The position numbers were made by a program, and so were the translations under genes. Below the pieces are notes generated by a model. It saw nothing but the letters and a program-made list of their open reading frames with translations, was not told the DNA's origin and did no database searches. Positions 8,076 to 34,906 of a DNA stretch of 64,000 nt are shown here, one piece after another (position 1 is the stretch's first letter; each line of letters begins with the position of its first letter). The stretch is from the IMG/VR virus record IMGVR_UViG_3300045996_002337, positions 62,001 to 126,000 of that record. The stretch is one strand, 5' to 3'.

Positions 8076-8083
8076 CCTTTTCG

Positions 8084-14147: not shown

Positions 14148-14154
14148 ATAAATA
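14148..14154 (+). promoter_or_regulatory. T4-type late promoter core
   Basis: ATAAATA between the hairpin and ATG 14177. Confidence 0.7.
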
Positions 14155-14176
14155 GAGCACATGTACTAAGGTCACT

Positions 14177-14779: not shown

Positions 14780-14780
14780 C

Positions 14781-15002: not shown

Positions 15003-15003
15003 A

Positions 15004-15219: not shown

Positions 15220-15243
15220 CGCAGAGGAATAGGAGATAAACAT

Positions 15244-16157: not shown

Positions 16158-16165
16158 GGTCATAA

Positions 16166-17779
16166 ATGTCATGCTGCCCGCCAGCACCAGCAATTAACGT
16201 TGGTGGATCAGGTGATGAAGATTTCCATGCCCAGGATACCGAGATTAGGCGCGGTGAGACCGTAGAATGTTATATGCGGCGCTCTGGCAACACGACTGGG
16301 CGGATGGATGACAAGACAGAGGACATTCCAAATAAGATTCGGAACACTGACATTCCTCTTTCTGCGAATGCTACCGTAAACGTTACGTTTCGGCTTACAC
16401 CAAACTCTGATCGCGTTGCCACCTCCTGGGAATTGAAAGATGCCGATGACAACGTCATCTCAGCCTTCTCGGGCCCACCAGATGTAACCTTTACCGCGGG
16501 CGGTGTTCTATCAGGCACGTTCGCGCCAAGCTACCACGGAAAATCAATCAAAGTTAAGGTAACAGCCCGCGATGCTAATGGCGAAATTGACACGCGCGGC
16601 TTTGTGTTCTCACCAGCGGTTGCAACTGGCTCAAATAACATAAGCTTTATTCATCCATTGCCAGGTTCACGTGTAACATCAAAGTTTGGTCCTCGACGGC
16701 CGCCGGCTACAGGGGCAAGTTCACAACATGGCGGGGCAGATTTTGCGTACGCAGGTGGAAAAGTGGCTGACGTTGTCGCTGCAGCGGACGGGGAGGTAGA
16801 GTTCACCGGCTTCCAGAACGGCGGGGCGGGGAATTACGTAAAGATTCGTCACCTCAACACCGCTGGTAAACACCTGTGTACGACCGTCTACATGCACTTG
16901 AACAAGATCTATGTGACGACCGGCCAAAAGGTCGCAGCAGGCCAAAAGATTGGGCTTGAAGGCAACACTGGCGTGGGTACGGGAGCCCACTTGCACTTTG
17001 AATGCCGCCTGCCAAATGGAACTAAAATTGATCCAGTCCCACTTATCAGAGGGTCTCTAGCGGTTGCACAGCAAACCAATCCTGACAACAGCGCAGTTGA
17101 GGAATCTATTGAGACACAGGAAGCCAATAACGTCCTAACGAAGGAAAACGTTGAGGCAAAGGAGAACGGATGCGAGGCCTTTGGCCCTGAGTATCCAAAG
17201 GACCCAACTGAGACGACAGATCCGGTGCCTGTTGTTCCAATTACCGACCCGTTTGAGCGTGCATGGTTTTTCACCATGACCCATGAAGTTGGTCCGCACT
17301 GGACGACTGCTGCGCCAACCGATCCCGAAGTTTCTGCAGGCCTTATCGACACCGCCCCGCAACGTAAAAAAGTAGGGTACGTAAACACCCCCTCATACCC
17401 AGGTGGTGAAACAAAGTTCGGCATTGCGCAAGGACCCAACCCAAGCATCAATGTTAAGGGGATTGCCTACGATCCAGCAAAGCAGACAGGCTTCAATAAC
17501 TATTGGAAGCGGGGACCATCAACACTAGTTGTTCAAAAGCCAAAAACTGCCATCATGTTGTTTGACATGAACTACCTGCACGGTGTTGGTAATGCAAACG
17601 TGATTAAGGCCAATGCGGACATTGCGGACAAGACTGATGCAGAAGCAGTTGAGGCGCTTTCAGCTGCTCAACGCGCCTTCATGTTGAACATCGTTGCCAA
17701 AAATCCTCAGCGTAAAAAATATCTCAACGGTTGGCTAAAGCGGTCAGCCGAACTTCTTGCATACGTAAAAGCTCTCTAA
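16166..17779 (+). CDS. Multidomain peptidoglycan hydrolase: Ig-like + M23 peptidase + GH108-like lysozyme/PG-binding
   Basis: M23 HGGAD, YMHL, HLHFE; GH108 'THE...GGETKFGI' and 'KYLNGWLKR'. Confidence 0.8.
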   Translation: MSCCPPAPAINVGGSGDEDFHAQDTEIRRGETVECYMRRSGNTTGRMDDKTEDIPNKIRNTDIPLSANATVNVTFRLTPNSDRVATSWELKDADDNVISAFSGPPDVTFTAGGVLSGTFAPSYHGKSIKVKVTARDANGEIDTRGFVFSPAVATGSNNISFIHPLPGSRVTSKFGPRRPPATGASSQHGGADFAYAGGKVADVVAAADGEVEFTGFQNGGAGNYVKIRHLNTAGKHLCTTVYMHLNKIYVTTGQKVAAGQKIGLEGNTGVGTGAHLHFECRLPNGTKIDPVPLIRGSLAVAQQTNPDNSAVEESIETQEANNVLTKENVEAKENGCEAFGPEYPKDPTETTDPVPVVPITDPFERAWFFTMTHEVGPHWTTAAPTDPEVSAGLIDTAPQRKKVGYVNTPSYPGGETKFGIAQGPNPSINVKGIAYDPAKQTGFNNYWKRGPSTLVVQKPKTAIMLFDMNYLHGVGNANVIKANADIADKTDAEAVEALSAAQRAFMLNIVAKNPQRKKYLNGWLKRSAELLAYVKAL

Positions 17780-17780
17780 C

Positions 17781-18365
17781 ATGGCAAAAACTGCACCACT
17801 TCCATCAGTTCAAGTAAATTACCCAGTCGGTCGAACAATGATCAAGTCGGGGGATATCATCAGCTTCTTTGCTTCACACGAAGAAGGGGTGATTAAGCGT
17901 CTTGTCACACAATCGATTCTATTTTTTACAGGCTCTAGAATCTATCACACTGGTGTTGCGTTGTGGATCACGACGGACACAGGCGAACGCCGGCTCATGC
18001 TATGCGAAGCGGTTGGTGTTGGGCGCCGCCTTGTAAACTTGTCGCGCTTTCACCATCACAAGATGGAGGTCCACAGCGTTCCAAAAGAGCTCGATCAAAA
18101 AGCAATTGAAGCGTATCTCATGGATGGCATTGGAACTGGATATGGTTTTTGGACCTTGATTGCGATAGCAATTCGTGAGTTCATCGGTGTGAAGCCACCG
18201 TCAAGCAGCCGCGTTCAGGTATGCTCTGAGACCGCAGCAAGAACCTGGAGAGCAGGCGGCATGGAGTTTGAACAAACAATTTTAAGCCCTGGCAAGCTGC
18301 GAAATGTACTCTCAGAGAAGGGTGTACCACCAAGCTTTGTGATCAATCCAGACTCAGGAAATTAA
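17781..18365 (+). CDS. Permuted papain-like NlpC/P60 (YiiX/YebB-like) enzyme
   Basis: 'KSGDII', 'YHTGVA', later 'VCSE' and 'SPGKL' (His before Cys). Confidence 0.7.
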   Translation: MAKTAPLPSVQVNYPVGRTMIKSGDIISFFASHEEGVIKRLVTQSILFFTGSRIYHTGVALWITTDTGERRLMLCEAVGVGRRLVNLSRFHHHKMEVHSVPKELDQKAIEAYLMDGIGTGYGFWTLIAIAIREFIGVKPPSSSRVQVCSETAARTWRAGGMEFEQTILSPGKLRNVLSEKGVPPSFVINPDSGN

Positions 18366-18385
18366 ATTTTAACACGGAACAACAG

Positions 18386-18685
18386 ATGAGCGGCAATATT
18401 GTCAGGATCGGGGATAGCGTTAGCTGTGGGGACCATGCAGCTGTCGGGTCCGGTGATGTTCACGCCAACGGCATGCCGATTGCTCATGGTGGTAAAAGGT
18501 CAACTACAGGCCACGGATGCTTTCATCCAACTGAGTTCATTGGCCCCTGGTCAAAAACCGTTTTTGTCAATGGTGAACCAGTCGCCATCAAGGGCAAAAC
18601 AAAGATCGCGGTACATCGCTGCGGAAAGCAATGGCATGATGGGGTTGCCACCTCTGGGTCTTCAACCGTTTCAGTCGAGGAGTAA
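18386..18685 (+). CDS. PAAR-repeat spike tip protein (gp5.4-like)
   Basis: 'RIGD...CG...GS.DV.ANG.P', 'TVFVNGEPVA', conserved His/Cys. Confidence 0.8.
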   Translation: MSGNIVRIGDSVSCGDHAAVGSGDVHANGMPIAHGGKRSTTGHGCFHPTEFIGPWSKTVFVNGEPVAIKGKTKIAVHRCGKQWHDGVATSGSSTVSVEE

Positions 18686-18687
18686 AC

Positions 18688-19635
18688 ATGCCCAGTGGTC
18701 TAATGCCTTCCTACAAATATCGGCCATCTATCGCTGGAACTGAGCCAGCCATTCGTACCCGGTCCACGAGAAGGGCCCGGCTCTTCGCTGGTGGCACGTA
18801 CTTTCGCGCTAGAGATCCCGGGGTTCAAGGAAACAACATCTCAGTCGAGCTCATTGACTGGGTCTCCACACAACCTGGGGAAGAAGGAGTTCGTAAAGGT
18901 AAACTGATCGTCACGAACCATAACACAGTTTTTTCTGAGAACGTAACTGGTCCTGCAGATGTCGAGCTGCTTGAGCAAGAGCTGACGTGGAGAGAGCGAT
19001 ACGTCATCGACCAGCTAACAGGAACACCGCAAGCGCACAAATATAGCATTAGCTTACAAATAGCGCCCGCCGCAGTCCTTGAGGAGGATATCGGCCCCTT
19101 CAACTTTTCTCGCCTTTTTCACATTCCGAGTAAGCTGTCGGTAAAGCTCACCCCAAGGACCTCAGAATTCACACAAACCAGTGTGATTACGATCAAAGCA
19201 CGCACCCGGGTGTACGATTTGGTTGAAATTTCAGTGACCCCAGAGGCCGAGGAGGGGGAGCCAGCGGGCGAACCAATGACAGGGTGGGACCCTGAGGCAC
19301 TAAGGACCGCGGTTAACGCCTCAGATCCTTGGATTGAGATGATGGAGCGCAGCGGAACTGAGGGATCTGGAGGAGGTGTGCCGCTCCCAGATCTCGAAAA
19401 GCCTGACGCGCAGGACGATGGGGTAGATGATACGTTTTTGTTTGCTTTCCCAAGCACCCGCCTGGCAGGCGGTGATGGTCTCCCATTGACCCCATCAGGG
19501 GAGCGCACAGGACCAAGCCGCTCCATTGTTCATATCAACTTTGGAGAGGCCTACAACGGCAAGATGGCCGAAGTAAATGAGGTCTACGAGTGGGTAGGTG
19601 AAACGCCAGCAAATGGCGTATGGAAGCGTTACTGA
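18688..19635 (+). CDS. Hypothetical virion protein
   Basis: Last gene of the + strand structural run; converges on lolA. Confidence 0.45.
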   Translation: MPSGLMPSYKYRPSIAGTEPAIRTRSTRRARLFAGGTYFRARDPGVQGNNISVELIDWVSTQPGEEGVRKGKLIVTNHNTVFSENVTGPADVELLEQELTWRERYVIDQLTGTPQAHKYSISLQIAPAAVLEEDIGPFNFSRLFHIPSKLSVKLTPRTSEFTQTSVITIKARTRVYDLVEISVTPEAEEGEPAGEPMTGWDPEALRTAVNASDPWIEMMERSGTEGSGGGVPLPDLEKPDAQDDGVDDTFLFAFPSTRLAGGDGLPLTPSGERTGPSRSIVHINFGEAYNGKMAEVNEVYEWVGETPANGVWKRY

Positions 19636-22612: not shown

Positions 22613-23224
22613 TTAGGCGCTGAGCGTCTTTATAATTTCTTCAGACCAGTCTGTGTACAGTGGAACCGCAAAGTATTCCGCGCATTGAATCATAATTTCA
22701 TTTCCAGAATCAATGGCGTCTATGAAATTCTTGTCGGTGTATTTGAGCTTAGATAGGTATTTGTCAGCGGCTTCGGCTTCGGCGGCTTCAACGTTCGCGC
22801 CTTTACTGGCCGCGCCGCGCATGGCCTGAATAATTGCCTGGTCAAGCCCGGTTTGAAAGAACAGATCAGATACATCAGGCGACCAGAGAAATTCAAACGA
22901 GCCGATTGGGAAAATTGCGTGAACTCGCCCATAGGTCTGCGCGTCAACAAGTTCGCCGGTTGCAAATAGCGCAGCACTTCGCCCGTTAATGCCAAATTGT
23001 TGCTGAAACCAAGCGTCAACCAGTTCGTGCACTTTCTGGCTCGAGCTTTTTGGGCGACGGTCAATTCTAACTTCTTTGCGCAAAAACTCCGACTGAGGAT
23101 TCTTCAGACCACGATAAATGAGTCCACCTTGGGCCGCCCTCAGGAACGGTGCGCACTCTTCATTAATCATTTCAATGATCTTGGCCGCGTCTGTTTCGCT
23201 CTCAAACAATTCTCGAATTTTCAT
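22613..23224 (-). CDS. Putative internal head protein, possible ADP-ribosyltransferase fold
   Basis: Leader MKIRELFE; 'LIYRG', 'ALFAT', 'GNEIMI' resemble R-S/T-E ART motifs. Confidence 0.45.
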   Translation of the reverse strand: MKIRELFESETDAAKIIEMINEECAPFLRAAQGGLIYRGLKNPQSEFLRKEVRIDRRPKSSSQKVHELVDAWFQQQFGINGRSAALFATGELVDAQTYGRVHAIFPIGSFEFLWSPDVSDLFFQTGLDQAIIQAMRGAASKGANVEAAEAEAADKYLSKLKYTDKNFIDAIDSGNEIMIQCAEYFAVPLYTDWSEEIIKTLSA

Positions 23225-23895
23225 CTTTTTGCTTTGTTCATTCGCGTTAGACGCTTGCTTAATGATTTCTTGCGTGTGCGCTTCGACTTCAAAACGCGGA
23301 TGATCTTCTTCCGACGTCCTGCAATAGAGAGCTTCATGCGTGTCGATGCTTTAGCGCGCGGCTTGTAGGCCGTCTTGATGTTAGCAACGACACGACCTTT
23401 ACGGTATCCCGACGTTACTCGGAATCCCTTCTTGATCTTTTTACCAGAACGACGAAATGCAGCCTTCACTGCCTCATCAACTAGTTCAATTGTAACATCA
23501 TCGGTTGGCGGTTCATCCTCGGCTTCAGGTTCGCCCTCCTCAATGCCGAGCTCCTTCAGTGTATCCATGTCAAGAACTACACCTGAAGGATACACATCAT
23601 CGTTGACACGCGTTAGGACAATTGAATCTTCCGTAGGTTCAACCAGAACGACCTTGCCGTTCTGGTCCTTAATCTCCCCAGGTTCGCCGTCCTCAGCGAT
23701 GTCGAAGAACTTCTGAAGCTGAACGTTGTCAATCTTCAATTGGAAGCCATCGCAAGAGAGGATCAAACCATGATTGGCGAGGTGACCAACGGACCACCCA
23801 GCAGGAACCGTAGGTCCAACTTCAGGAGAGGCTTGCGCCTCTCCGTCTGTTGAAGGCTCTTCAATCTCTTTTGAGACTTCCTTTAGAAGATTCAC
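23221..23895 (-). CDS. Prohead core protein-like (acidic N-part, very basic C-tail)
   Basis: Likely GTG start 23895 overlapping the upstream stop (MNLLKEV); basic tail 'RRSGKKIKKGFRVTSGYRKGRVVA...' like T4-group prohead core proteins. Confidence 0.5.
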   Translation of the reverse strand: MNLLKEVSKEIEEPSTDGEAQASPEVGPTVPAGWSVGHLANHGLILSCDGFQLKIDNVQLQKFFDIAEDGEPGEIKDQNGKVVLVEPTEDSIVLTRVNDDVYPSGVVLDMDTLKELGIEEGEPEAEDEPPTDDVTIELVDEAVKAAFRRSGKKIKKGFRVTSGYRKGRVVANIKTAYKPRAKASTRMKLSIAGRRKKIIRVLKSKRTRKKSLSKRLTRMNKAKR

Positions 23896-26819
23896 AGCGA
23901 AGCTTTCACCAGTGCGTTGTACTCGGACTTGGTAACGCGATGCTTCTTGAACCATGCCTTGTTTTCTTCCCAGTCGCCACCAGAATCATAGCCATCCTTT
24001 TCAAGCTTAGCGAGATAGGTGTCCATGCCAGCGGCCGAACCGCCGAGGAACAACGCGCGAACTGCGCGAGCTGAACCATTAGTTGACTGTTGAATCTTGG
24101 ACAGCACTGCTTCAACATCTACCTTAGCTTCATTCAGATCTTCGTTAGCTTGTTCAGGCTGGCCACCACGTGGAGCAGTGTTCTTAGAAAGAACGTCTTG
24201 CAGTCGACCGATGAGGGTCAGTACCTGCGCGCGGTTACGAAGCTCAGCCTTGCGTGTGCGCAGCGACTGCACGATCTGTGTACGGCGACGTTGGAGTACA
24301 TCGTCTGGAATGCCCAGAGCGGAGACGAGACCAACAACTGCTTGCGCGAAGTCGTCGTTACCAACGTCAAGGGCTTCTTTGAGTGGGGGTGCTTTGTTAA
24401 GCTTCACGACCTTATGATCGTCCAGGCCTTCACCGTCGATTTCGTCTTGGGCATCTTGCTTGGTATCAAATGGACCATCGTAGTAGTCGCCATCGTATGT
24501 CACGATGTAATAACCTGGGCCCTCACGATTTTCTTTGAGGCCAGAGAGCTTCTTGCCTTCCGAAACCGGCTTCATCGCGTCAGACGACTTAACACCTAGA
24601 CGGGTTGCCAGCAGACGCAGCGCACGTTCAAGATTTGAATCCTGCTCGATGAGCTCAGCGGTGCGATACACGCCAGTACCAACTGCAGATGGACCACCAG
24701 TGGTGATCAGTGATTCTGGAAGACCCAGTTCTACGAGAACGGTTTCAAACAGCTTCTGAATGAACGAACCACGCTTCTGGCGAGGAGCTTCAGTGAGCTT
24801 GGCTTCACTAACTTTGGCCGTCTTGATCCAACCAGTCGACCCATCCCATTCGCCGACGCCCTTTGTGGAGCCACGCTTGAACGGCTTGTCACCGACCAAA
24901 GCATTGGCGATGTCCTCGTCGCCATCAAGCCAGTGGCCAGGGTGGGCCTTCTTTAGAGCGCGCTTCCAGGCTGCGAACGACGTGTATTCCTGGTTGCCAT
25001 CTGCATCTTTAGCTTCATTTGTTTGCTCAGCTGGTGGTGCGTAGCCCTTGGCATTTGCAAGGCCCTCATACAGCGACATGAATGCGCGACGGACAGAGAC
25101 CTTCTTGCGGAGCATATCAGCAGCACTGGAGATTGTTGACTCAACGTCTTCAGTGTTTAGGTAACGACCTGGAACGCCCGCCATTACGTGGAAAGCGATC
25201 AAGCGCTTTGCGAATGGGAGCTTGAGCTTAGCGGTCAGGGCGCGTGCTTGGCTGTCAAGCGGAATGTTGAAGCCGTCCTTGACGCCATCACGATCTTCGC
25301 CAGGAGCCTCTTGCAGAACGCGGGCGAGGAATTTGGAACCAATTGTTGTCATGTTATTCTCCTGTTCAATATCCTCTTTTTTGAGGCGGGTTAGTTTTTT
25401 GCCGTGCTTTTCCTTGGTGAGCTTCTTATCACCACGCATTACGTACTCTTCGCCTTCATTGTCCTCAATGTAGACTACATTGTTTGGACCCTCTACCATC
25501 GCGGCGATGTGAAGACCCTTACCTGTCATTGCCTTGATGGCAGCAGCTTGAGAAGGAGAGTCTGCTTCTTGCTCCTTGGCCTCATTTGTGCGAGACGTTG
25601 GGACGATGTCGAATGTCAAGTCCTTGTACTTTGCCTGATCACCCATCTCTTCGATCCACTGTTCGCAATTATCGTATGAACCTTCATAGTAGATGCGACC
25701 CTTTGTCTCATCTGCTTTGACGCGATAGGTGCCCTTGGCCTCGTTCATGCGTTTTTTGGCGCGATCAGTTAGCAGATCAGGATTTTGATTGATCAAATCC
25801 GCCATGTCATCCTCATCCAGCGACGCAAAGCCAAACTCGCCATATTCATCTTCAGCCATCTTATTTGCTCGCTTAATGTCGATGTAATCTTCCATGTCAT
25901 CTTCATCAAGCCCCGAGAATCCGAATTCGCCGTGATGCTCTTTTGCGATGTAGTTCAGCTGCGCCCACGGCGTTTTGCCCTTAGCATTGAGCGCCTCCTT
26001 CACGGGCTCATCCTCATCTTCAACTGGCTCTGCTGGTGCCGCCTTCTTTTTCTTTTTCTTCTTAGGCTTGCCGTCTTCGTCAGTCTCGTCCTCTTCACTT
26101 GACCCTTCGTCAGAGGCTTCCTCATCTCCAGCTTCATCTTCTGCGGCTGCAGCGGCAATTTCGTCCTCTACTTCAGCTTGAGGATCGGCTTTCTTTTTAG
26201 GAGCCTCTTCCTCCTCGGAGTCATCACTAGCAACAACGTCAAAGTTGTCATCAGCAAAATCATCGCCGATTTCAAGATCTTCGGTGTCATCGAGTTCAAG
26301 GTCAGCGTCAGGATCGGCATCGCCCTCCTCGTCTTCAGAACGAGGCCATACGACGTCAACGATGTCAAACTCAGTCGTAAGGCGGTTGATGGCTTCCTCG
26401 ATGTCATCCTCGAGGCCGAGCATGTTCTTCATGGCCTCTTCAAACTTGTCGGCTTGCTCGGCGTTGACATAGACCTTAACGATCTGGCCGTCATCGGTTT
26501 CAAGCCCGAACGGGACGGTGTCGATCTCGTCATTGAGTTCCTCAGCGCGCTCGATATAGTTTGCTACATCGGAACCACTCACTACACCGTTCGAGTTAAT
26601 GGTGTTGCGCATCAAGCTGAAGGCAATGTCAGTGCTCGCGCCTGCCTTATCGGCGACGTCGTTGGTTCCAGCGTCAGTGGCATCCGATTTCTTGAGAAGC
26701 TGCTGCGTGTTGCTCAGCTCCTTAAGAAGGCTTGACTGAGACTGAGATTCCTGTTGAACGGGTGCGACAGTAGGGGTCTCAGCGATTGATTGTGTGTTGA
26801 TGGTCTTTAGAAGACTCAT
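23892..26819 (-). CDS. Large acidic probable head-internal polyprotein
   Basis: 975 aa; repeated hydrophobic-x-E-A/G junctions, acidic tract, internal repeats, internal SD+ATG at 25352. Confidence 0.55.
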   Translation of the reverse strand: MSLLKTINTQSIAETPTVAPVQQESQSQSSLLKELSNTQQLLKKSDATDAGTNDVADKAGASTDIAFSLMRNTINSNGVVSGSDVANYIERAEELNDEIDTVPFGLETDDGQIVKVYVNAEQADKFEEAMKNMLGLEDDIEEAINRLTTEFDIVDVVWPRSEDEEGDADPDADLELDDTEDLEIGDDFADDNFDVVASDDSEEEEAPKKKADPQAEVEDEIAAAAAEDEAGDEEASDEGSSEEDETDEDGKPKKKKKKKAAPAEPVEDEDEPVKEALNAKGKTPWAQLNYIAKEHHGEFGFSGLDEDDMEDYIDIKRANKMAEDEYGEFGFASLDEDDMADLINQNPDLLTDRAKKRMNEAKGTYRVKADETKGRIYYEGSYDNCEQWIEEMGDQAKYKDLTFDIVPTSRTNEAKEQEADSPSQAAAIKAMTGKGLHIAAMVEGPNNVVYIEDNEGEEYVMRGDKKLTKEKHGKKLTRLKKEDIEQENNMTTIGSKFLARVLQEAPGEDRDGVKDGFNIPLDSQARALTAKLKLPFAKRLIAFHVMAGVPGRYLNTEDVESTISSAADMLRKKVSVRRAFMSLYEGLANAKGYAPPAEQTNEAKDADGNQEYTSFAAWKRALKKAHPGHWLDGDEDIANALVGDKPFKRGSTKGVGEWDGSTGWIKTAKVSEAKLTEAPRQKRGSFIQKLFETVLVELGLPESLITTGGPSAVGTGVYRTAELIEQDSNLERALRLLATRLGVKSSDAMKPVSEGKKLSGLKENREGPGYYIVTYDGDYYDGPFDTKQDAQDEIDGEGLDDHKVVKLNKAPPLKEALDVGNDDFAQAVVGLVSALGIPDDVLQRRRTQIVQSLRTRKAELRNRAQVLTLIGRLQDVLSKNTAPRGGQPEQANEDLNEAKVDVEAVLSKIQQSTNGSARAVRALFLGGSAAGMDTYLAKLEKDGYDSGGDWEENKAWFKKHRVTKSEYNALVKASL

Positions 26820-26828
26820 GTTAGTCCT

Positions 26829-29129
26829 TTATACGGTGCTGTCGGTTGGCTTTGGAAACTTAGCCTTCTTGACATCAGGGTTGCGTTTGCGTTTCACAAC
26901 CTTGCGCGCCTTGTTAGGCATGGCGGGTGTGTTTGAGGCGGTGTCAGCGCTTTTTGTCGCAACCTCTAGTGAAGATCCTTGATTTTGCGGCGTCGAATCA
27001 CCATCGTCTTCAACCAGCGAGTTTACTTCAGCGAGCAGTTTCATTTCCTGAACCATTTGATCATTTTCTCCGTTCGCATTCAACAGAAGCTCTTCTTGAA
27101 TCGCCTTCAATCGAATGAACAACGGTGAAGTTGGGATGAATTGCTGCACGTAGTAGTACAGCTTTGCAATCGTTTTAACCTGCTTATCATGCGAAAGGGC
27201 CTCAAAATCGAACACCCCGTCAAGCAGGGTATTTATACGGTCGACATTGAGTCCCTCGAACTGCTGCAGAAGCTTAAGCGTTTTCTTGTGGTCTGACCAA
27301 TCAATTGGGACATCCTTGCCAAAGCTCAGGTCCATGTGTAAGTATCGGGCGGCGGCAGCAGGCGCACGTCGCGCCACCTTGTAGATCTGCTGAGAGTTTT
27401 TGTTACCAATGAGCTTCTTAACAGCCGGCTGAGATGCTCTCCAGACTGGATAACCCCAAAAATTGAGGGGAGACATTTCCTTGCTCCAACTTGTGAGCTT
27501 GTAATTTGTCTTGTCCTTTAGCATGCGAAGGCCCTTGGCGTCCTTCGTTGCATAGATGATTACCGACATCATTACGGTGGCAAGGTAGATGTTAAGGATA
27601 GTCCAGGCATCCTTGCCAGAGTACCGCGCTTTGTCCGTGTCGTACTTTGATTCGAACAGAAGACCTTCAGCAACCGGCTCAGAATCACCGACGGTGTGAA
27701 CAGCTTTGGCATGGTGCCCGTACAAAACCGCAATCACTTGTGCAACGGTTTTTGTCTTTTTGATCTTGTCAAACAGCTCAAGAATGTTACGGCGAGATTC
27801 AGCAAATGCTAGAAGGGTACGCTTCTCAATTTCGGGGGTGATACCAATCACCCTACCATTCTTTAACTTCAGGCGAAATTCATCCTTGTGTTCCTTGAAG
27901 TCCTCTAGGAGGGTCTTCAGGTCCATGGCTGCGCGCTGAACGAGTGCGAGGATCTTACGTTTGGCGCCAAGAAAATCATCAATTTCAAGCTGCGCTGAAA
28001 AGGCCTTGACCGTATCAACGGGAGTTGCTCCCTTAACGGCTGCAAACGCCCGCTTCGCAGTACCTCCGCGAGATAGCTCCGCGTTGCCCAGAAGATCTGC
28101 GATGCTGATCTTCATGTTGCCCAAGATTCCGCCCCGCGCTTCAAGTGGTGCATTTGGGTCCAGTGTTTTAACAACACCAGAGATTTGATTTCGAATTGCG
28201 TGATTGAAGGAATTGATCGTCGTGAAGTTGTCCTTGTCAACTAGCTTGATCAGCTCACCATTTGTTGGATCGCGTAGAACGACACCTTCAATTCCCACAT
28301 CTTCGTCTGAAGTCAAGTCACTATCTGACAGCGCAGGTTTAATCTTGCTGACGTAATTGTCGAGGAGTTCTTTTTTGACGGGCAGCTTGAAATCCGTCAT
28401 GATCTTAGCGGTAATCTCTGCCTTCTTGTCCTTGGCCTGCGGCCGCACGTCGACTTTAATAGAGCCGAGCGACGTGAAAAGCAGATCACCATTCGTCAGC
28501 TCAACACCTTCAACACCTGCTGGCTCATTCAAAAACTTTTCAAGTGCATCGAGGTGAGAGGTGAGGTTGATGTCCTTCAGCTTAGAAGGATCAACGCGTT
28601 GGGCACCAGTGAACTGGAATGTAACTTCCGTTGGGTGAATGTCGAGATTCTCACCATCGGTTGTAACAACAATGTTAGCCTGAACCTTAACAGAGGTTCC
28701 ACCCAGGGCTGTAGAAAGCTGGTCAGCGATTACGTCAGGTGTTCCATTAACACCACGCAGAAAGGCGATGTAGGACTTCCCCTCTGCTCCGTATGTGACG
28801 GCATTAGGCTGGCGCCCGTAGAGCACCTCAGCCTCAACCATTTGCCCTGGTTGCATGATTCGATTGATGTCTTCAATTCGTGCTTCCATGGCAGCGTGAG
28901 CCGAGCGAAAGCCGTTGTACGCACCAAAGTTTGGGTACTCGGCTTCAGCATAGAAGCGTTTGGCCTGAGCCCGCTTTCCTTCACGAGAGGTGAAGAACTT
29001 GCCATCTTCATCTCGTCCTAGCCAGAGATTTGCGCCATCAAGTTTTTCACTGGCGTGAAAGGAGGCAATGTTTCGAACTGCCTTGATGAAAGCTGGTAAA
29101 GCGAGGTCTTCTAGGTGCTGAATCGACAT
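26829..29129 (-). CDS. Ligase-like nucleotidyltransferase (DUF6267-like N-domain) fused to an unknown C-domain
   Basis: 'HLED', motif I 'SEKLDG', 'EAEVL', 'IEGVVL', 'IKLVDK'. Confidence 0.6.
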   Translation of the reverse strand: MSIQHLEDLALPAFIKAVRNIASFHASEKLDGANLWLGRDEDGKFFTSREGKRAQAKRFYAEAEYPNFGAYNGFRSAHAAMEARIEDINRIMQPGQMVEAEVLYGRQPNAVTYGAEGKSYIAFLRGVNGTPDVIADQLSTALGGTSVKVQANIVVTTDGENLDIHPTEVTFQFTGAQRVDPSKLKDINLTSHLDALEKFLNEPAGVEGVELTNGDLLFTSLGSIKVDVRPQAKDKKAEITAKIMTDFKLPVKKELLDNYVSKIKPALSDSDLTSDEDVGIEGVVLRDPTNGELIKLVDKDNFTTINSFNHAIRNQISGVVKTLDPNAPLEARGGILGNMKISIADLLGNAELSRGGTAKRAFAAVKGATPVDTVKAFSAQLEIDDFLGAKRKILALVQRAAMDLKTLLEDFKEHKDEFRLKLKNGRVIGITPEIEKRTLLAFAESRRNILELFDKIKKTKTVAQVIAVLYGHHAKAVHTVGDSEPVAEGLLFESKYDTDKARYSGKDAWTILNIYLATVMMSVIIYATKDAKGLRMLKDKTNYKLTSWSKEMSPLNFWGYPVWRASQPAVKKLIGNKNSQQIYKVARRAPAAAARYLHMDLSFGKDVPIDWSDHKKTLKLLQQFEGLNVDRINTLLDGVFDFEALSHDKQVKTIAKLYYYVQQFIPTSPLFIRLKAIQEELLLNANGENDQMVQEMKLLAEVNSLVEDDGDSTPQNQGSSLEVATKSADTASNTPAMPNKARKVVKRKRNPDVKKAKFPKPTDSTV

Positions 29130-29151
29130 ATTTTCAGATAGAGTTACGGCC

Positions 29152-29158
29152 TATTTAT
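29152..29158 (-). promoter_or_regulatory. T4-type late promoter core
   Basis: ATAAATA on the minus strand upstream of 29129. Confidence 0.7.
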
Positions 29159-31164: not shown

Positions 31165-32178
31165 CTATCTTCTCCTCAGTCTATCTTCCAAGCCCCAAAG
31201 GTTGAGCTCGATAGAAGATTGTAACTTATTGTCTGGGTGGCGCGCGTTCTTTAGCAGGCTGTAGGCGGTGAATGGTAGACCGTAATTCTCTACTGACTCA
31301 TTGATGTCATTGACGCGATTATCAACTGTCGTAATCTCCCAACCATTTTCGAGCACCTGCTGGGACAGCGAATCACCCTGTGAATCGCGGTCTCGTACAA
31401 ATATGAGGCGGCGCCTAGTTCTCTTCAGAATTTCTATCTTAGCGGCGTTCAGTGAAGCGCCCATGATAGAGATACCATCGACGAGGATGGCGTTGAAAAC
31501 ACCTTCTGTCACGAACAAAGGAGCTTCCTCATACGAGTGGAGCTTGTCGTAGCCGTAGATGACTGCATCCTTTGAGACGACGCAGTTGAGGTAGCGGGGC
31601 TTGACGTCGTTGTCAATCGCTCTCGCCTGCCAATAAATGAGCTTGCCATCTCTCCAATAAGGAATGATGACCCGGCGAAGCATCTTTGGATCCAGGCTAA
31701 AGTAAAACTGCGTCTCAAGCGGATCGATGCGCCTAGCGATAAGGTACTCAAGAAGTGGCTCTTGAAAATCTTCTAGACCCTCACTTAACAGAGGGCGGGT
31801 ACGATCTGGAAACGCCACCTCTGGGGTGAAAAGCTTTACCTTTGTGAGGCTTTCAGATGTGATTTCTTTTTCTGTCTTTTCGGCAGGATTCAGAAAAATT
31901 GAAGACGTCAGCTCACGAAGGTCCTCACGAGAGATGCCGAAAGCCTCAAGGATTTCCTTGGCGTTGCGAGACAGCTTGCCTGTGCCTTCTTCGTAACGAA
32001 AGCGCGCGGAACAATTCCAGCAGCTGTAGCCCGTGGTGTCGCCATCAAACTTGAACCCACCGCGCTCACTGTGATCGTTGCAGACAGGGCAGCGTAGATT
32101 GTAGAAGCCCGTTGAACTGAGCTTTCCCAAGCTTACGCGTTGTTGAATGATGTCTGCTAATGACTTTTGTTCGATCAT
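31165..32178 (-). CDS. gp61: DNA primase (gp61-like)
   Basis: Zn ribbon CPVC..CWNC, 'WQARAI', TOPRIM 'VTEG..NA', 'DRD'. Confidence 0.85.
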   Translation of the reverse strand: MIEQKSLADIIQQRVSLGKLSSTGFYNLRCPVCNDHSERGGFKFDGDTTGYSCWNCSARFRYEEGTGKLSRNAKEILEAFGISREDLRELTSSIFLNPAEKTEKEITSESLTKVKLFTPEVAFPDRTRPLLSEGLEDFQEPLLEYLIARRIDPLETQFYFSLDPKMLRRVIIPYWRDGKLIYWQARAIDNDVKPRYLNCVVSKDAVIYGYDKLHSYEEAPLFVTEGVFNAILVDGISIMGASLNAAKIEILKRTRRRLIFVRDRDSQGDSLSQQVLENGWEITTVDNRVNDINESVENYGLPFTAYSLLKNARHPDNKLQSSIELNLWGLEDRLRRR

Positions 32179-32231
32179 GCTTCATTGTAACACCAGTGGA
32201 ACCTGGGTTAAACCTGAAGCTCGAATGCAGG

Positions 32232-32318
32232 TTAGACGCGCTTAACGATTTTCTTGCCACCAGAGCCTGGCTCTTCTAGCTTGCCGGCGCGCTTCGGCTC
32301 TAGTTCTGCTACTTTCAT
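32232..32318 (-). CDS. 28-aa mini-ORF/remnant with shared leader (MKVAELEPKRAGKLEEPGSGGKKIVKRV)
   Basis: Not in the ORF track; ATGA overlap; first 18 nt identical to the start of 32315-32668. Confidence 0.45.
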   Translation of the reverse strand: MKVAELEPKRAGKLEEPGSGGKKIVKRV

Positions 32319-32668
32319 GAGTCACTGTCGATGCTTTTTACAGCCGCGAGATCCTTTAGCTTGATCTCTTTTTCATCATGATTATCACCAGTGATGAGAC
32401 GTACTGAAGCCGGTCGATAGCGCTTCGACCATGTAACAACTGGGGCGTCACTCATATTGGCCGGGTGTTCGCCCTTACGCATTAGGTAAATCGCACCGTA
32501 AAGATCTTCGTCATATTCGCCAAACTCATTGTTAAGCAGATCGACAATGTCAAGCTTGAAGCGCTTAGCAAATGCCTCGAGAATGTCAAGAACGAGACGT
32601 TCCTTTTCGTACGCGTTGAGCTTAGGTTTGGACGTTTTTTCGGCTTCGAATAGTTCTGCTACTTTCAT
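32301..32668. repeat. 18-bp direct repeat TAGTTCTGCTACTTTCAT (32301-32318 and 32651-32668)
   Basis: Exact match, encodes MKVAEL on the minus strand. Confidence 0.9.
32315..32668 (-). CDS. Putative internal head protein (leader MKVAELFE)
   Basis: Shared leader; late operon. Confidence 0.55.
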   Translation of the reverse strand: MKVAELFEAEKTSKPKLNAYEKERLVLDILEAFAKRFKLDIVDLLNNEFGEYDEDLYGAIYLMRKGEHPANMSDAPVVTWSKRYRPASVRLITGDNHDEKEIKLKDLAAVKSIDSDS

Positions 32669-33102
32669 CGGTTACTTTTAGAAAGGATGTACTCCATGTT
32701 TCCGTACTTGTCTTCGGTTTTCTTTAACTTGAAGCCAAGCTCGCTCGCTGCTCTCTTGAGCAAACGGTCATAGAGGCGTTCACGAGAGGCCGATTCGCCA
32801 TCAATCACTACTATGAGAAGCTCTGGTTTTACGCCGCTAATAAGACGTTTCACAAACTCCGCTGCATAACTGAAGACTTCGAACTCATTACCGGATCCAG
32901 TTGCCTCAAGCTCTCCGTATTCGTCGAAGTAGATTGCCCAAGAGTTCTCTGGATAATTTCTGTCTTCTTCCGGATCAGGCTGAATCTTCAGCGCACCGAA
33001 GTTGATGGCACGATCGCCGATGGTGACAGTTGAGCTAACCTTGTCCGCCGTAAATTTGACGTCCATCTCTTTGGCTGACTTGAAGAGTTCTTGTAGTTTC
33101 AT
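32665..33102 (-). CDS. Putative internal head protein (leader MKLQELFK)
   Basis: Shared leader; 'TG.GN.F.VF...SR.RLYDRL' phage family pattern. Confidence 0.55.
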   Translation of the reverse strand: MKLQELFKSAKEMDVKFTADKVSSTVTIGDRAINFGALKIQPDPEEDRNYPENSWAIYFDEYGELEATGSGNEFEVFSYAAEFVKRLISGVKPELLIVVIDGESASRERLYDRLLKRAASELGFKLKKTEDKYGNMEYILSKSNR

Positions 33103-33575
33103 TTGTCAACTTTCACGACCGAATGACCTTTGATTTTGAATTGATCAGGGTCAAATAGAATGTATGCCTCAATCTGCTCGTTCTCTAGCGCATCAAACAC
33201 GTGGAGACTGTCATATCCCTCTTTTTTGAGCTGGGCCACGAACCGTGGAACATAAACTAAGTCAATTGGATTTGACCCATCATATTCACTGTGCTCGGCA
33301 ATTTCTTTACAGTAGAAATATGGCCTAAGGCTAAAATCAACGCCTGCACGCTCTGCCATCTCGAATAGGTCGCCATCATCAAGAGGATTGTTGACGCTTA
33401 ATTCGCCATGCAGCACGACGCCTTCGCCATTACCGCTATTTTCAATAGCGTACCATCTGGCGCCACTTTTTTCCAAAGTCACAAAAATCGGAGGCCGAAG
33501 ATTGGTCGTGGGTAGCTTGCCGGTGCCATGAAACGCCTTGAGTTTTTTGGCTTCAAATAGCTGTTCAAGTTTCAT
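33099..33575 (-). CDS. ADP-ribosyltransferase-like (ART-PolyVal type) internal protein (leader MKLEQLFE)
   Basis: 'AFHGT', 'IFVT.....A.WYA', 'L.V.NPLD', 'LKKEGYD', 'YILFDPDQFK'. Confidence 0.65.
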   Translation of the reverse strand: MKLEQLFEAKKLKAFHGTGKLPTTNLRPPIFVTLEKSGARWYAIENSGNGEGVVLHGELSVNNPLDDGDLFEMAERAGVDFSLRPYFYCKEIAEHSEYDGSNPIDLVYVPRFVAQLKKEGYDSLHVFDALENEQIEAYILFDPDQFKIKGHSVVKVDK

Positions 33576-34054
33576 TTATATCCAGTGAAAACGAGCTTCT
33601 TTGGATTCTTGTCATCGCGCATGACCTTAAATGTCTGCATGTCACTCACGGGTTCTCCACGAATCCCGATATCGTCTTCTTCTGACCATTCAAACGTGGC
33701 CCGAATCGTGGCAACTGCAACGTCCTGCCCGCTCTCCAATGTAATCTCGCTGTGGCTGATGATTGAAAGATCGTCCATCCGGCCACCAAAAATATCCTTA
33801 GCAATTTTCTCGATCTCGGCTGCATCATCAGCCGAAATTTTGGTCCATGGCCAAAGTGTATCGTAGTCATCGAACCCCGATTTTTCCCATTTTTCCGTCC
33901 ACCACTGAGGCGAATACTTAGCCGGCTTGGCCTTCTTAGCTGTCTTCTCTTTCCAAGCCTTGGCTTCAGCGGAGTTGGCGTCTTTGAAACGCTTCTCAAC
34001 GCCGTCAGCAGATTTGACTACGTACATTCCTTCAAACAGATCTGATACTTTCAT
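33572..34054 (-). CDS. Putative internal head protein (leader MKVSDLFE)
   Basis: Start moved to ATG 34054, 22 nt after the late promoter. Confidence 0.55.
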   Translation of the reverse strand: MKVSDLFEGMYVVKSADGVEKRFKDANSAEAKAWKEKTAKKAKPAKYSPQWWTEKWEKSGFDDYDTLWPWTKISADDAAEIEKIAKDIFGGRMDDLSIISHSEITLESGQDVAVATIRATFEWSEEDDIGIRGEPVSDMQTFKVMRDDKNPKKLVFTGYK

Positions 34055-34076
34055 GAGGCGCCCCAATGTGTTCGTT

Positions 34077-34083
34077 TATTTAT
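34077..34083 (-). promoter_or_regulatory. T4-type late promoter core driving the leader-gene array
   Basis: ATAAATA on the minus strand. Confidence 0.7.
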
Positions 34084-34292
34084 GCATCTGGAAGAACAGG
34101 GACCCATGGGGTTGACCGTCGCTCCATCTCATGACTTTGAAACCCGGAATACCCAGGAGTCATCGTCAGAACCTTATTGCAATCTGCACAGACTACAAAC
34201 ACGCTAGAGACCTGCCACTCACCCTCGGCAAAGACCTCAAAATCGCTTGTCACCTTATTCAGGTGAGCGCAGCTCATTTTCGCCGCTTCCAT
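34080..34292 (-). CDS. Small hypothetical protein (Cys/His-containing)
   Basis: ORF coupled to the SLT gene; start probably MSCAH. Confidence 0.4.
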   Translation of the reverse strand: MEAAKMSCAHLNKVTSDFEVFAEGEWQVSSVFVVCADCNKVLTMTPGYSGFQSHEMERRSTPWVPVLPDA

Positions 34293-34906
34293 GCAGCCAA
34301 CTTGGCTTCAGCGCCTAGGGCATAATGGAAGGTGTCATCGACGGCCTTCACACCACCCGGCCCACGGTTGTAGGCATTCACCAGTTCACGGCCGTGAAAC
34401 CCATATTGGACCTGAAGCATGCGAAGATACTTTGTGCCGACCTCGAGATTAAATTTCTCATTGAGGATCAAGTTGGCCTTGATTTCATCATCCGTGCGTG
34501 TGTGAAAGTCATACTTTGCCCAAAGGCCGGGGTAGCGAGCGAGGACATCTTTCGTGGCAGCCAGCTTAATTTGCATGGGGCCGAAGTAAGCCTCAGGTCC
34601 AGGGTTCGCTACCTTGTAGCTCTTTAGTCCACCCGCGTGCGTTTCCTGTAGAAGGACACTTTGCACAACCTCGGGGTTCTTGAATCCTTCGGCCTTAGCC
34701 AAAGAATACGCCATGTTGAGGAGGGCGCTCTGTTTGCTAGTCAGCGTGGTCGGGAGAAGCGTGGCCGCTTGACCTCCCATCGTCTTGCCAGGTTTTTCAG
34801 CGATTACAGCGGTCGGTGCAGGCGCTGGCAGAAGTTGGTAAAGCTCGTACGCTCCACTGATAACGCCTGCCGCAAACAACACCATGACGGCGATTACTTT
34901 TTTCAT
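34274..34906 (-). CDS. Lytic transglycosylase (SLT-like) with N-terminal signal/anchor
   Basis: 'LLQET', 'GPMQI', 'G.KYL', 'AYNRGPG'. Confidence 0.8.
   Translation of the reverse strand: MKKVIAVMVLFAAGVISGAYELYQLLPAPAPTAVIAEKPGKTMGGQAATLLPTTLTSKQSALLNMAYSLAKAEGFKNPEVVQSVLLQETHAGGLKSYKVANPGPEAYFGPMQIKLAATKDVLARYPGLWAKYDFHTRTDDEIKANLILNEKFNLEVGTKYLRMLQVQYGFHGRELVNAYNRGPGGVKAVDDTFHYALGAEAKLAAWKRRK

What the first reader, a model, noticed from the sequence alone, without database searches (positions are those of the whole stretch)
32232..34083. Cassette array of unrelated cargo genes sharing a capsid-targeting-like leader
Seen: behind one late promoter (34077-34083), five ATGA-coupled ORFs begin MKVSDLFE, MKLEQLFE, MKLQELFK, MKVAELFE and MKVAELE, then diverge completely; a sixth (22613-23224) begins MKIRELFE. 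Known: T4 internal proteins use a ~10-aa capsid-targeting sequence (MKTYQEFIAE type) removed by prohead protease gp21 after Glu, and the T4 IPI locus is hypervariable and counter-defensive. Inference: a plug-and-play system in which any domain given this leader is packaged and injected with the DNA, giving a set of uncharacterised injected effectors inserted beside the primase gene.
Basis: partly seen in the sequence, partly recalled or inferred. Interest (0 to 1): 0.8.

Follow-up and report, generated by a model that had tools for sequence, protein, structure and literature searches.

The report
Packaging-tag leader on jumbo-phage cargo genes
A giant phage carries a row of unrelated small genes that all begin with the same eight amino acids, and in a studied relative every annotated protein with this tag is found inside virus particles, so the tag most likely loads enzymes into the capsid for delivery with the DNA, as the phage T4 capsid-targeting sequence does.

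Summary
Five ATGA-overlapped minus-strand ORFs (34054-32232) and a sixth (23224-22613) start with MK[VIL]x[EDQ]L[FE][EKP]. These are the only six matches in the window, against 0.005 expected by chance. Codons vary synonymously, and similarity ends at residue 9.

The window comes from a 350-kb jumbo phage of the T4 superfamily. Its closest isolate is Ralstonia phage RsoM2USA.

The cargos are unrelated:
- B is an ART-PolyVal/AcrIF11-like ADP-ribosyltransferase. Its leader lies outside the fold.
- C is a DUF6934/GNAT-like protein.
- F belongs to a large paralog family.
- A and D are orphans.

Close relatives carry other cargos with the same leader in the same two slots. RsoM2USA has both slots empty.

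The main test used Agrobacterium phage Atu_ph07. All 18 annotated proteins that start M[KR]xx[EDQ]LxE are in its published virion proteome (baseline 131/714; p=2e-14, or 4e-6 counting seven cargo families once). They include homologs of F and C.

The leader contains an LxE motif like the gp21-cleaved T4 propeptides of gp24, Alt, gp22 and the internal proteins.

Cleavage, injection, counter-defence function and sufficiency of the tag remain untested. This is a new variant of the T4 capsid-targeting system, not a new principle.

The parts
34077..34083 (-). ATAAATA, a T4-late-promoter-like element 22 nt upstream of the ATG of gene A
   Evidence: The 7-mer occurs 12 times against 2.5 expected, and most copies lie 20-35 nt upstream of starts on the same strand. 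This site is CATAAATA, a 7/8 match to TATAAATA. Function as a promoter is inferred.
33572..34054 (-). Cassette A, 160 aa, leader MKVSDLFE followed by G. The cargo is an orphan.
   Evidence: No PHROG, Pfam or NCBIfam family. Atlas search gave only a weak NTF2-like C-terminal resemblance, TM 0.44.
33099..33575 (-). Cassette B, 158 aa, leader MKLEQLFE followed by A. The cargo is an ART-PolyVal/AcrIF11-like ADP-ribosyltransferase (H16, Y108).
   Evidence: Pfam PF18760 scores below its cut-off. Atlas features 0.94, TM 0.64-0.68. 191 HMMER homologs, with alignments starting at residue 10-15. AF2 model pLDDT 93.9, with residues 1-10 at 59 and the fold starting at residue 11. Foldseek hits PARP domains, AcrIF11 (6kyf) and a cyanophage pre-ejectosome chain.
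32665..33102 (-). Cassette C, 145 aa, leader MKLQELFK. The cargo is DUF6934-like with a GNAT-like fold and is homologous to the Atu_ph07 virion protein gp483.
   Evidence: Atlas features 0.95, TM 0.79. BLASTP to gp483 gives E 2e-6 and 3e-4 against its two repeats, aligned from residue 1. gp483 is in the virion proteome.
32315..32668 (-). Cassette D, 117 aa, leader MKVAELFE followed by A. The cargo is an orphan.
   Evidence: The only database match is the protein itself.
32232..32318 (-). ORF E, 28 aa, leader MKVAELE with a basic tail. Probably a truncated or remnant cassette.
   Evidence: Its junction is 88% identical over 26 nt to the D junction. It is not conserved upstream of primase in relatives.
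22613..23224 (-). Cassette F, 203 aa, leader MKIRELFE followed by S. Member of a large paralog family (phrog_11975) whose Atu_ph07 members are virion proteins.
   Evidence: M1, L6 and E8 are invariant across the window phage, Atu_ph07 and RsoM2USA homologs. F is the last gene of a unit that starts behind ATAAATA at 29152-29158.
23221..29158 (-). Upstream genes of the F unit: ATAAATA at 29152-29158, a 766-aa gene, a 975-aa gene, and a 244-aa gene with a basic C-terminal tail.
   Evidence: The 766-aa protein is homologous to RsoM2USA ORF438, which is listed among the abundant virion bands. The 975-aa protein partly matches ORF437.
31165..32178 (-). DNA primase. It marks the downstream border of the variable slot.
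   Evidence: Relatives share the primase at 42-75% identity, but the content upstream differs.
34274..34906 (-). 210-aa gene with a signal peptide. It marks the conserved upstream border of the variable slot.
   Evidence: Homologs sit upstream of primase in L004, L006, L011, L012 and RsoM2USA ORF444.

Best explanation
The eight-to-nine-residue N-terminus M-K-[VIL]-x-[ED]-L-[FL]-E-[small] is a virion-incorporation tag of this jumbo-phage lineage. It is the functional counterpart of the T4 capsid-targeting sequence.

Proposed mechanism:
1. The genes are transcribed from T4-late-like promoters and translated by ATGA coupling.
2. The leader binds the scaffolding core of the assembling prohead, so the attached cargo is enclosed.
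3. The gp21-family prohead protease then probably cuts after Glu in the LxE motif (after E8, and in some leaders E5) and releases the mature cargo.
4. The cargo leaves the capsid with the DNA at infection and acts on host targets before any phage gene is expressed.

The cargos are an ADP-ribosyltransferase of the AcrIF11/ART-PolyVal kind, a GNAT-like protein, a member of a large paralog family and two orphans.

Two genomic slots hold different tagged cargos in different relatives: upstream of primase, and after the 244-aa gene.

What is shown:
- the leader is a selected peptide on unrelated folds and lies outside the fold of B
- the slots vary among relatives
- equivalent leaders mark virion proteins in Atu_ph07

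What is inferred:
- head (not tail) location
- binding to the scaffold
- cleavage
- ejection
- counter-defence function
For: Peptide-level selection:
- Fifteen leaders from the window and its relatives give M, K and L6 invariant and E5/E8 nearly so.
- Leu, Glu and Val codons vary synonymously, and information content drops after position 9.

Modularity:
- Cargos are unrelated by BLASTP and have different folds.
- Homologs of B inside 1,500-5,000-aa polyvalent proteins align only from residue 10-15.
- Residues 1-10 of B are low-confidence coil ahead of a pLDDT-94 fold.

Cargo turnover:
- L004, L005 and L009 (primase 71-73% identical) carry other leader genes upstream of primase.
- L006, L011, L012 and RsoM2USA carry none there.
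- L008 and L009 hold other leader cargos where F sits.

Virion association:
- All 18 annotated Atu_ph07 proteins matching M[KR]xx[EDQ]LxE are in the published virion ESI-MS/MS list: gp43, gp53-63, gp381, gp408, gp482, gp487, gp561 and gp672.
- Their computed masses equal the masses in the table.
- Fisher one-sided p = 2e-14, or 3.6e-6 counting seven unrelated cargo families once.
- Several of them lie in regions with few virion genes.
- F is homologous to gp53-63 and gp408. C is homologous to gp483.

Likeness to T4:
- The T4 record gives gp24 MAKINELLRE, Alt MELITELFDE, gp22 MLKEQLIAEA and IPII/III MKTYQEFIAE.
- Alt is cut at ITE-6. The capsid-targeting residues 4 and 7 direct targeting, and residues 8 and 10 direct processing (PMC5694885; PMC9026906).

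Protease:
- A gp21 homolog with conserved His, Ser and Asp is present in RsoM2USA, in a relative's contig and in Atu_ph07 gp204.

Expression:
- ATAAATA lies upstream of A and upstream of the F unit.
Against: - There are no virion data for the window phage, which is a metagenomic contig.
- The Atu_ph07 leader (MRWEQLTE) differs from the window's leader, and that phage is distant.
- Atu_ph07 virions were PEG-purified. The list also contains RecA-like, SSB and RNR proteins with one to three unique peptides, so some contamination is possible.
- The proteome does not say head or tail, and does not show removal of the leader.
- C has Lys at position 8, A has Asp at position 5 and B has Gln at position 5. 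No single cleavage site fits all the leaders.
- The window phage's own protease was not found in two scans.
- The cassette array sits in the replication gene region, not among head genes.
- The protease-leader complex prediction gave no answer.
- Looser variants of the leader in Atu_ph07 (gp137, gp597) are not in the virion list.
Confidence: 0.7

Rival explanations
1. The leader is a docking peptide for a common intracellular partner, such as a chaperone, the sliding clamp or replisome, host RNA polymerase, or a Clp-type unfoldase acting on an N-degron. It would not be a packaging signal. The cargos would act inside the infected cell during replication.
For: The array lies between replication genes, next to primase and helicase. 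Atu_ph07 encodes ClpX, ClpP and a Clp adaptor. The M-basic-hydrophobic start loosely recalls N-terminal ClpX recognition motifs. That comparison is from my own knowledge and was not tested.
Against: All 18 tagged proteins are in Atu_ph07 virions, including scattered genes. The leader contains the LxE motif of gp21 substrates and resembles T4 head propeptides. Late-type promoter elements lie upstream.
Confidence: 0.12
2. The shared start acts at the nucleic-acid level. It would be either a translational-coupling or initiation element, or a recombination joint (ATGAAA plus microhomology) that moves cassettes. The peptide itself would have no role.
For: - All junctions are ATGA.
- The second codon is always AAA or AAG.
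- The D and E junctions are 88% identical over 26 nt.
- The slots gain and lose cassettes.
- T4 also has duplicated alt 5' fragments, alt.-1 and alt.-2.
Against: Leu6 uses CTT, CTC, CTG, CTA and TTG, and Glu and Val codons also vary while the amino acids stay the same. Other junctions are only 69-77% identical. M1, L6 and E8 are invariant in F homologs from three distant phages. Recombination at the leader may still contribute to cassette exchange as a secondary role.
Confidence: 0.08
3. The genes are fast-diverging paralogs of one ancestor, and the N-terminus is simply the last conserved part.
For: Jumbo phages hold many paralog families (PMC3622015). The F family is such an array in Atu_ph07.
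Against: B has an ART fold with homologs that lack the leader, or that are internal to giant proteins. C has a GNAT-like fold. The leader is disordered and outside the domain of B. Seven Atu_ph07 cargo families show no similarity to each other.
Confidence: 0.03

Closest known systems
T4 capsid-targeting sequence (CTS) of internal proteins IPI/IPII/IPIII and Alt, with the polymorphic internal-protein loci of T-even phages
   Same: - A short N-terminal peptide shared by otherwise unrelated proteins.
- An amphipathic pattern with two or three hydrophobic residues and a (L/I)xE motif before a small residue.
- A phage of the T4 superfamily with a gp21-family protease in the clade.
- An ADP-ribosyltransferase among the cargos, as Alt is in T4.
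- Variable gene content between relatives.
- A truncated duplicate of a leader-bearing 5' end (ORF E), comparable to T4 alt.-1 and alt.-2.
   Different: - The consensus differs: MK[VIL]x[ED]L[FL]E against MKTYQEFIAE. It is closer to the T4 gp24 and Alt propeptides.
- It is 8-9 rather than 10-19 residues.
- The cargos sit as an ATGA-coupled array next to primase in a 350-kb jumbo phage.
- Packaging, cleavage and ejection have not been shown for this phage.
Polyvalent proteins of phages and conjugative elements (Iyer et al. 2017, PMC5512222), which include the ART-PolyVal domain
   Same: The domain of B is homologous to ART domains inside 1,500-5,000-aa polyvalent proteins. ART and GNAT domains are proposed to be delivered with the DNA (PMC7824862).
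   Different: Here each domain is a separate small gene with its own tag. The domains are not fused in one polypeptide attached to a MuF or portal-associated module.
AcrIF11, an anti-CRISPR ADP-ribosyltransferase (PDB 6kyf)
   Same: The model of B matches 6kyf (Foldseek E 8.6e-4). Atlas clusters nearest to B carry PF26151/PF18760.
   Different: Sequence identity is 18%. The target and activity of B are unknown. As far as I know, AcrIF11 is not reported to be packaged.
Propeptides of ejection proteins in phiKZ/SPN3US-like giant phages
   Same: Head-internal proteins are processed by a gp21-related protease after Glu in a three-residue motif (PMC5694885).
   Different: Most of those propeptides are 80-130 residues long and are not a shared short tag. 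Those phages belong to another lineage.

Membership tests
T4-type capsid-targeting-sequence (CTS) proteins | A short N-terminal peptide shared by proteins that are otherwise unrelated | tested here: met
   Six genes in the window share it. The cargos are unrelated and have different folds. The same leader occurs on other cargos in relatives.
T4-type capsid-targeting-sequence (CTS) proteins | The tagged proteins are present in mature virions | tested here: inconclusive
   There are no virion data for the window phage. By proxy, 18 of 18 tagged Atu_ph07 proteins are in the published virion proteome, including homologs of F and C.
T4-type capsid-targeting-sequence (CTS) proteins | The peptide alone is sufficient to package a foreign protein | not testable with these tools
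   This needs a leader-reporter fusion in a cultured phage.
T4-type capsid-targeting-sequence (CTS) proteins | The propeptide is removed by the prohead protease after Glu in a (L/I)xE motif | tested here: inconclusive
   Each of the six leaders has at least one hydrophobic-x-E within residues 3-8: LFE-8 in A, B, D and F; LQE-5 in C; VAE-5 in D and E; IRE-5 in F. Cleavage itself was not observable. The complex prediction gave no answer.
T4-type capsid-targeting-sequence (CTS) proteins | The phage encodes a gp21-family prohead protease and a scaffold core | tested here: inconclusive
   Not in the window, and the window's own contig was not recovered in two scans. The protease is present with conserved His, Ser and Asp in RsoM2USA ORF379, in relative contig 3300045747_000454 and in Atu_ph07 gp204.
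T4-type capsid-targeting-sequence (CTS) proteins | Sequence match to the T4 IPIII targeting sequence MKTYQEFIAE | tested here: not met
   The consensus differs. Only the pattern is shared: hydrophobic-x-E-hydrophobic-hydrophobic followed by a Glu. The nearest T4 peptides are gp24 MAKINELLRE and Alt MELITELFDE.
ART-PolyVal (PF18760) / AcrIF11-like ADP-ribosyltransferases (gene B) | Pfam model matched above the gathering score | tested here: not met
   17.9 bits against a cut-off of 31.2, E 0.0056.
ART-PolyVal (PF18760) / AcrIF11-like ADP-ribosyltransferases (gene B) | Homology to family members and an ART fold | tested here: met
   191 HMMER homologs, many of them internal to polyvalent-size proteins. 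Atlas clusters nearest to B carry PF18760/PF26151. The AF2 model (pLDDT 93.9) matches PARP catalytic domains and 6kyf.
ART-PolyVal (PF18760) / AcrIF11-like ADP-ribosyltransferases (gene B) | The catalytic H-Y-E residues | tested here: inconclusive
   H16 is invariant and Y108 is at least 90% conserved in 45 homologs. Candidate Glu residues lie in ENEQIE near residues 131-136 but are not an invariant column. No activity test was done.
Polyvalent proteins (Iyer 2017) | Two to fifteen conflict domains fused in one polypeptide | tested here: not met
   A to F are separate ORFs of 28-203 aa, each with its own start codon and leader.
R-S-E ADP-ribosyltransferases (gene F family) | Sequence or fold match to known ARTs | tested here: not met
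   The only basis is motifs: YRG, RSxS and NEI conserved in the family. There is no Pfam, PDB or NCBIfam match for 12 members or their profile.
T4-type late promoter | TATAAATA about 20-35 nt upstream of the start, recognised by a gp55-type sigma factor | tested here: inconclusive
   CATAAATA lies 22 nt upstream of A. ATAAATA is enriched about fivefold and positioned upstream of starts. No transcript data exist, and the sigma factor was not sought.

The most novel reading that the evidence does not exclude
A short, sequence-recognisable tag (M-[KR]-x-x-[EDQ]-L-x-E, with lineage-specific flavours) defines the whole set of capsid-loaded, injected proteins of a large group of T4-superfamily jumbo phages. 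Dedicated genomic slots exchange tagged cargo cassettes between phages, possibly by recombination at the ATGA-leader joint. If so, unknown early-acting anti-defence enzymes, such as orphans A and D and the F family, could be read directly from metagenomic sequence.
Probability: 0.35. Interest if true: 0.8.

Novelty: new variant of a known kind. Interest (0 to 1): 0.65.

Why it matters
Proteins injected with phage DNA act before any phage gene is expressed. They are prime candidates for counter-defence and host take-over, yet they are usually found only by virion proteomics of cultured phages.

A leader that predicts virion incorporation from sequence alone would allow three things:
- Injected proteins could be listed for uncultured jumbo phages. 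In Atu_ph07 the prediction held for 18 of 18 proteins.
- New effector families could be picked out: here two orphans, the F family, and small stand-alone ART and GNAT-like enzymes.
- A short tag would be available for loading foreign proteins into jumbo-phage capsids, as the T4 targeting sequence already allows for T4.

The finding also extends the T4 capsid-targeting principle to phages that share only about 30-35% identity in core proteins with T4.

Tried and rejected
- Megablast of the locus against phage records found no match.
- tblastn of B against phages found no match.
- Word-based homolog searches for B and D returned only the query, and F returned two relatives.
- The single-sequence AF2 model of B failed, pLDDT 33. 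It was replaced by a model built on an alignment.
- A sequence search of B against PDB found nothing.
- A profile of the F family against PDB and Pfam found nothing meaningful. The idea that F is an R-S-E ART stays a motif-level lead only.
- B against Atu_ph07 gp381 (starts MKWQDLSEGIKVYHGS): BLASTP is not significant and hhalign probability is 15%. gp381 is not claimed as a homolog of B.
- Two scans for the window contig's own prohead protease did not return that contig.
- Complex prediction of a relative's protease with residues 1-30 of B gave no answer. It is not evidence either way.
- Read laying gave only short contigs and no joints, so it provides no evidence on recombination between leaders.
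- Paralog divergence, an RNA-level signal and a secretion signal were considered and rejected. The reasons for the first two are given under the rival explanations. A secretion signal was rejected because the leader is acidic and not hydrophobic.
Full report
**1. The observation**

Five consecutive ORFs lie on the minus strand between 34054 and 32232, and a sixth lies at 23224-22613. They begin MKVSDLFE (A), MKLEQLFE (B), MKLQELFK (C), MKVAELFE (D), MKVAELE (E) and MKIRELFE (F). Every junction in the array is an ATGA stop/start overlap.

A scan of every ATG on both strands for MK[VIL]x[EDQ]L[FLE][EKP] returns exactly these six. 200 Markov-1 simulated windows gave a mean of 0.005 matches. None of the other roughly 73 genes in the window starts this way.

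With the first 12 residues removed, A, B, C and D have no BLASTP similarity to one another.

E is only 28 aa. Its junction is 88% identical over 26 nt to the junction of D, and it is not conserved in relatives. I treat it as a probable remnant.

**2. What the genome is**

The window has no close relative among deposited phages.

Its family-B DNA polymerase is 47% identical to that of Ralstonia jumbo phage RsoM2USA. It is 32-34% identical to those of XacN1, SCTP-2 and the 121Q group.

The window's own contig is a 349,660-bp IMG/VR viral genome (L003). It is therefore a jumbo phage of the T4 superfamily.

In that group a gp21-type prohead protease is a core gene:
- It is annotated in RsoM2USA as ORF379 (PMC8504454).
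- It is gp204 in Atu_ph07, 33% identical to T4 gp21.
- It aligns with T4 gp21 with conserved His, Ser and Asp.

I could not recover the protease of the window's own contig.

**3. The leader is a selected peptide module**

Fifteen leaders from the window and from IMG/VR relatives give the logo M-K-[VIL]-x-[ED]-L-[LF]-E-[A/G/S/D]. Information content falls to background after position 9. Leu6 is encoded by CTT, CTC, CTG, CTA and TTG, and the Glu and Val codons also vary. Selection therefore acts on the peptide, not on the DNA or RNA.

In the F family, M1, L6 and E8 are invariant. This holds across homologs from the window phage, Atu_ph07 and RsoM2USA that are otherwise 14-42% identical.

**4. 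The cargos**

*B.*
- It has 191 HMMER homologs. Many are internal domains of 1,500-5,000-aa proteins, and the alignments start at residue 10-15 of B.
- The nearest Atlas clusters carry ART-PolyVal and AcrIF11 families.
- An AlphaFold model built on 45 homologs has pLDDT 93.9. Residues 1-10 average 59 and are coil, and the first strand starts at residue 11.
- Foldseek matches PARP catalytic domains, AcrIF11 (6kyf) and a chain of a cyanophage pre-ejectosome.
- B is therefore an H-Y-E-type ADP-ribosyltransferase, with the leader as a flexible add-on.
- The Pfam score is below the gathering cut-off.
- Many stand-alone homologs of B carry other short N-terminal extensions. These include T4-like ones such as MKTFFQFLHE and MIIIKTYEQF.

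*C.*
- It resembles DUF6934 proteins with a GNAT-like fold.
- It is homologous to both repeats of Atu_ph07 gp483 (E 2e-6 and 3e-4). That alignment starts at residue 1.

*F.*
- It belongs to phrog_11975.
- The family forms tandem arrays in Atu_ph07 and also occurs in SCTP-2 and RsoM2USA.
- Conserved YRG, RSxS and NEI motifs suggest an R-S-E ART. No profile or PDB search supports this.

*A and D.* Both are orphans.

**5. Cargo turnover**

The first slot lies between a conserved signal-peptide gene (34274-34906) and primase. Relatives with 71-73% identical primase carry other leader genes there:
- L004: MKVSDLLED (114 aa) and MKVSELLEG (387 aa)
- L005: MKLHELTEA (221 aa)
- L009: MKVSELLTE (121 aa)

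L006/L007, L011 and L012 carry none there. In RsoM2USA the two border genes, ORF444 and ORF443, are adjacent.

The second slot lies after the 244-aa gene. It holds F in the window and other leader cargos in L008 and L009. RsoM2USA has no leader gene there.

Across these loci, 10 cargo families that are unrelated to each other share the leader.

**6. Test of the packaging idea against published data**

Attai et al. (PMC6102473) identified 131 virion-associated proteins of Atu_ph07 by ESI-MS/MS.

I fetched the whole 490,380-bp genome and scanned it for starts matching M[KR]xx[EDQ]LxE. I mapped the hits to gp numbers by CDS order. The mapping was checked with named genes and with exact agreement of the computed masses.

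All 18 annotated hits are in the virion table: gp43, gp53-63, gp381, gp408, gp482, gp487, gp561 and gp672. Fisher's one-sided test gives p = 2e-14. Counting the seven mutually unrelated cargo families once gives p = 3.6e-6.

Several of the hits lie in regions where few genes give virion proteins (gp381, gp487, gp561, gp672). I predicted their presence from the leader before I read that part of the table.

Further points:
- A nineteenth hit is an unannotated 92-aa ORF, so it could not have been in the search database.
- Virion proteins gp113, gp407 and gp483 carry leader variants at alternative or actual starts.
- Two looser variants, gp137 and gp597, are not in the list.
- The paper does not mention any N-terminal motif.
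- In RsoM2USA, neighbours of the F homolog start MNQTFKQFLTE, MTTFKEYLLEG and MKFSDYILES. These are close to T4 MKTFKEF and MKTYQEF.
- ORF257 in that cluster, and ORF438 (the homolog of the window's 766-aa gene upstream of F), are among the abundant virion bands.

**7. Comparison with T4**

The T4 record gives IPII/III MKTYQEFIAE, IPI MKTFKEFTST, Alt MELITELFDE, gp24 MAKINELLRE and gp22 MLKEQLIAEA.

The literature states the following:
- All T4 internal head proteins join the core through a capsid-targeting sequence, and gp21 removes these propeptides. Alt is cut at ITE-6 (PMC5694885).
- Residues 4 and 7 of the sequence direct targeting, and residues 8 and 10 direct processing (PMC9026906).
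- T-even internal proteins are a diverse set of defence-countering proteins that share only the targeting sequence (PMC3012670).

The window leader has the same layout. Hydrophobic residues sit at positions 3, 6 and 7. L-x-E at positions 6-8 is followed by a small residue. It is nearest in sequence to the gp24 and Alt propeptides.

The principle is therefore known. What appears unreported in the searchable literature is this consensus, its use across many cargo families in group-2 jumbo phages, and the cassette slots.

**8. Expression**

ATAAATA occurs 12 times against 2.5 expected. At least eight copies lie 20-35 nt upstream of a start on the same strand. These include the copies at 34077-34083 before A and at 29152-29158 before the unit that ends with F. 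L004 has GTAAATA at the same place. A late-type promoter is plausible but unproven.

Primase has its own conserved TGTTACAAT element just before its ATG. The array is therefore a separate transcription unit.

**9. Verdict**

The best explanation is a lineage-specific capsid-targeting, or more cautiously virion-targeting, leader on exchangeable cargo genes.

My confidence in each step:
- About 0.7 that the leader directs incorporation into virions.
- About 0.5 that it is removed after Glu by the prohead protease.
- About 0.5 that the cargos are ejected and act early on host targets.

Cleavage, head location, ejection, sufficiency of the tag and cargo functions remain to be shown.

The other attempts gave nothing usable. 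The complex prediction gave no answer. Laying public contigs on the locus showed only that near-identical pieces of B and C occur in wastewater, soil and groundwater metagenomes.

Noticed in passing
window 32184-32192 (minus strand), 5 nt upstream of the primase ATG at 32178: TGTTACAAT, an extended -10-like element, is conserved directly before the primase start codon in the window and in L004, L005 and L009, with TGTTATAAT in L006. The distance suggests a very short or absent 5' leader on the primase mRNA.
   Followed up: partly
window 23221-23955 (minus strand); L008 and L009 upstream of their leader genes; RsoM2USA ORF438 C-terminus (L159:4935-6617): The 244-aa protein ends in a strongly basic tail (RRKKIIRVLKSKRTRKK...). 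This tail is conserved in relatives just before the second cassette slot. RsoM2USA virion protein ORF438 ends in a similar basic tail.
   Followed up: partly
Atu_ph07 MF403008.1 315248-315526 (minus strand); gp113 84393-85148; gp407 303755-304783: An unannotated 92-aa ORF starts MRLFDLFEK. gp113 has an in-frame upstream start giving MKTLQDYLTE, which is very like the T4 targeting sequence. gp407 has an internal start giving MKLINLLEHD. The annotated starts may be wrong, or these may be leader variants.
   Followed up: partly
RsoM2USA L159:4935-6617 (ORF438) and L002:4256-7397 (ORF254-258): ORF438 has MLTFKQYAQPILTE from its eighth residue, and ORF254-256 and ORF258 start with T4-like leaders. 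The leader flavour differs between RsoM2USA (FKQ[FY]L.E) and the window clade (ELFE/ELLE), although they are each other's closest known relatives.
   Followed up: partly
proteins P0022, P0061, P0071, P0103, P0127, P0144, P0147 (homologs of B): Stand-alone ART-PolyVal homologs from unknown sources carry N-terminal extensions resembling the T4 targeting sequence (MKTFFQFLHE, MIIIKTYEQF, MKHIKLFENF). Others start MLLSELVAYHG, with the leader-like part abutting the catalytic His. This suggests that many small phage ARTs are tagged for packaging.
   Followed up: no
window 32932-33335, 33342-33571 and 33580-33732: Short assembled contigs, 93% (gene A) to 99% (genes B and C) identical to parts of genes C, B and A, occur in wastewater, soil and groundwater metagenomes from three separate studies, at very low depth.
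   Followed up: partly
T4 NC_000866 123065-123450 (L015:23066-23451): T4 alt.-1 begins MELITELFDG and is annotated as a duplication of the 5' part of alt. This parallels the window's 28-aa ORF E, which duplicates the leader of D.
   Followed up: no
window 1-8075 and 16166-17779 (plus strand): Two very large ORFs (1315 aa with an open 5' end, and 1366 aa) have no Pfam family. A 537-aa protein carries an M23-peptidase/endolysin-like domain, as tail or virion lysins do. The plus-strand block 1-19635 looks like a structural module.
   Followed up: no
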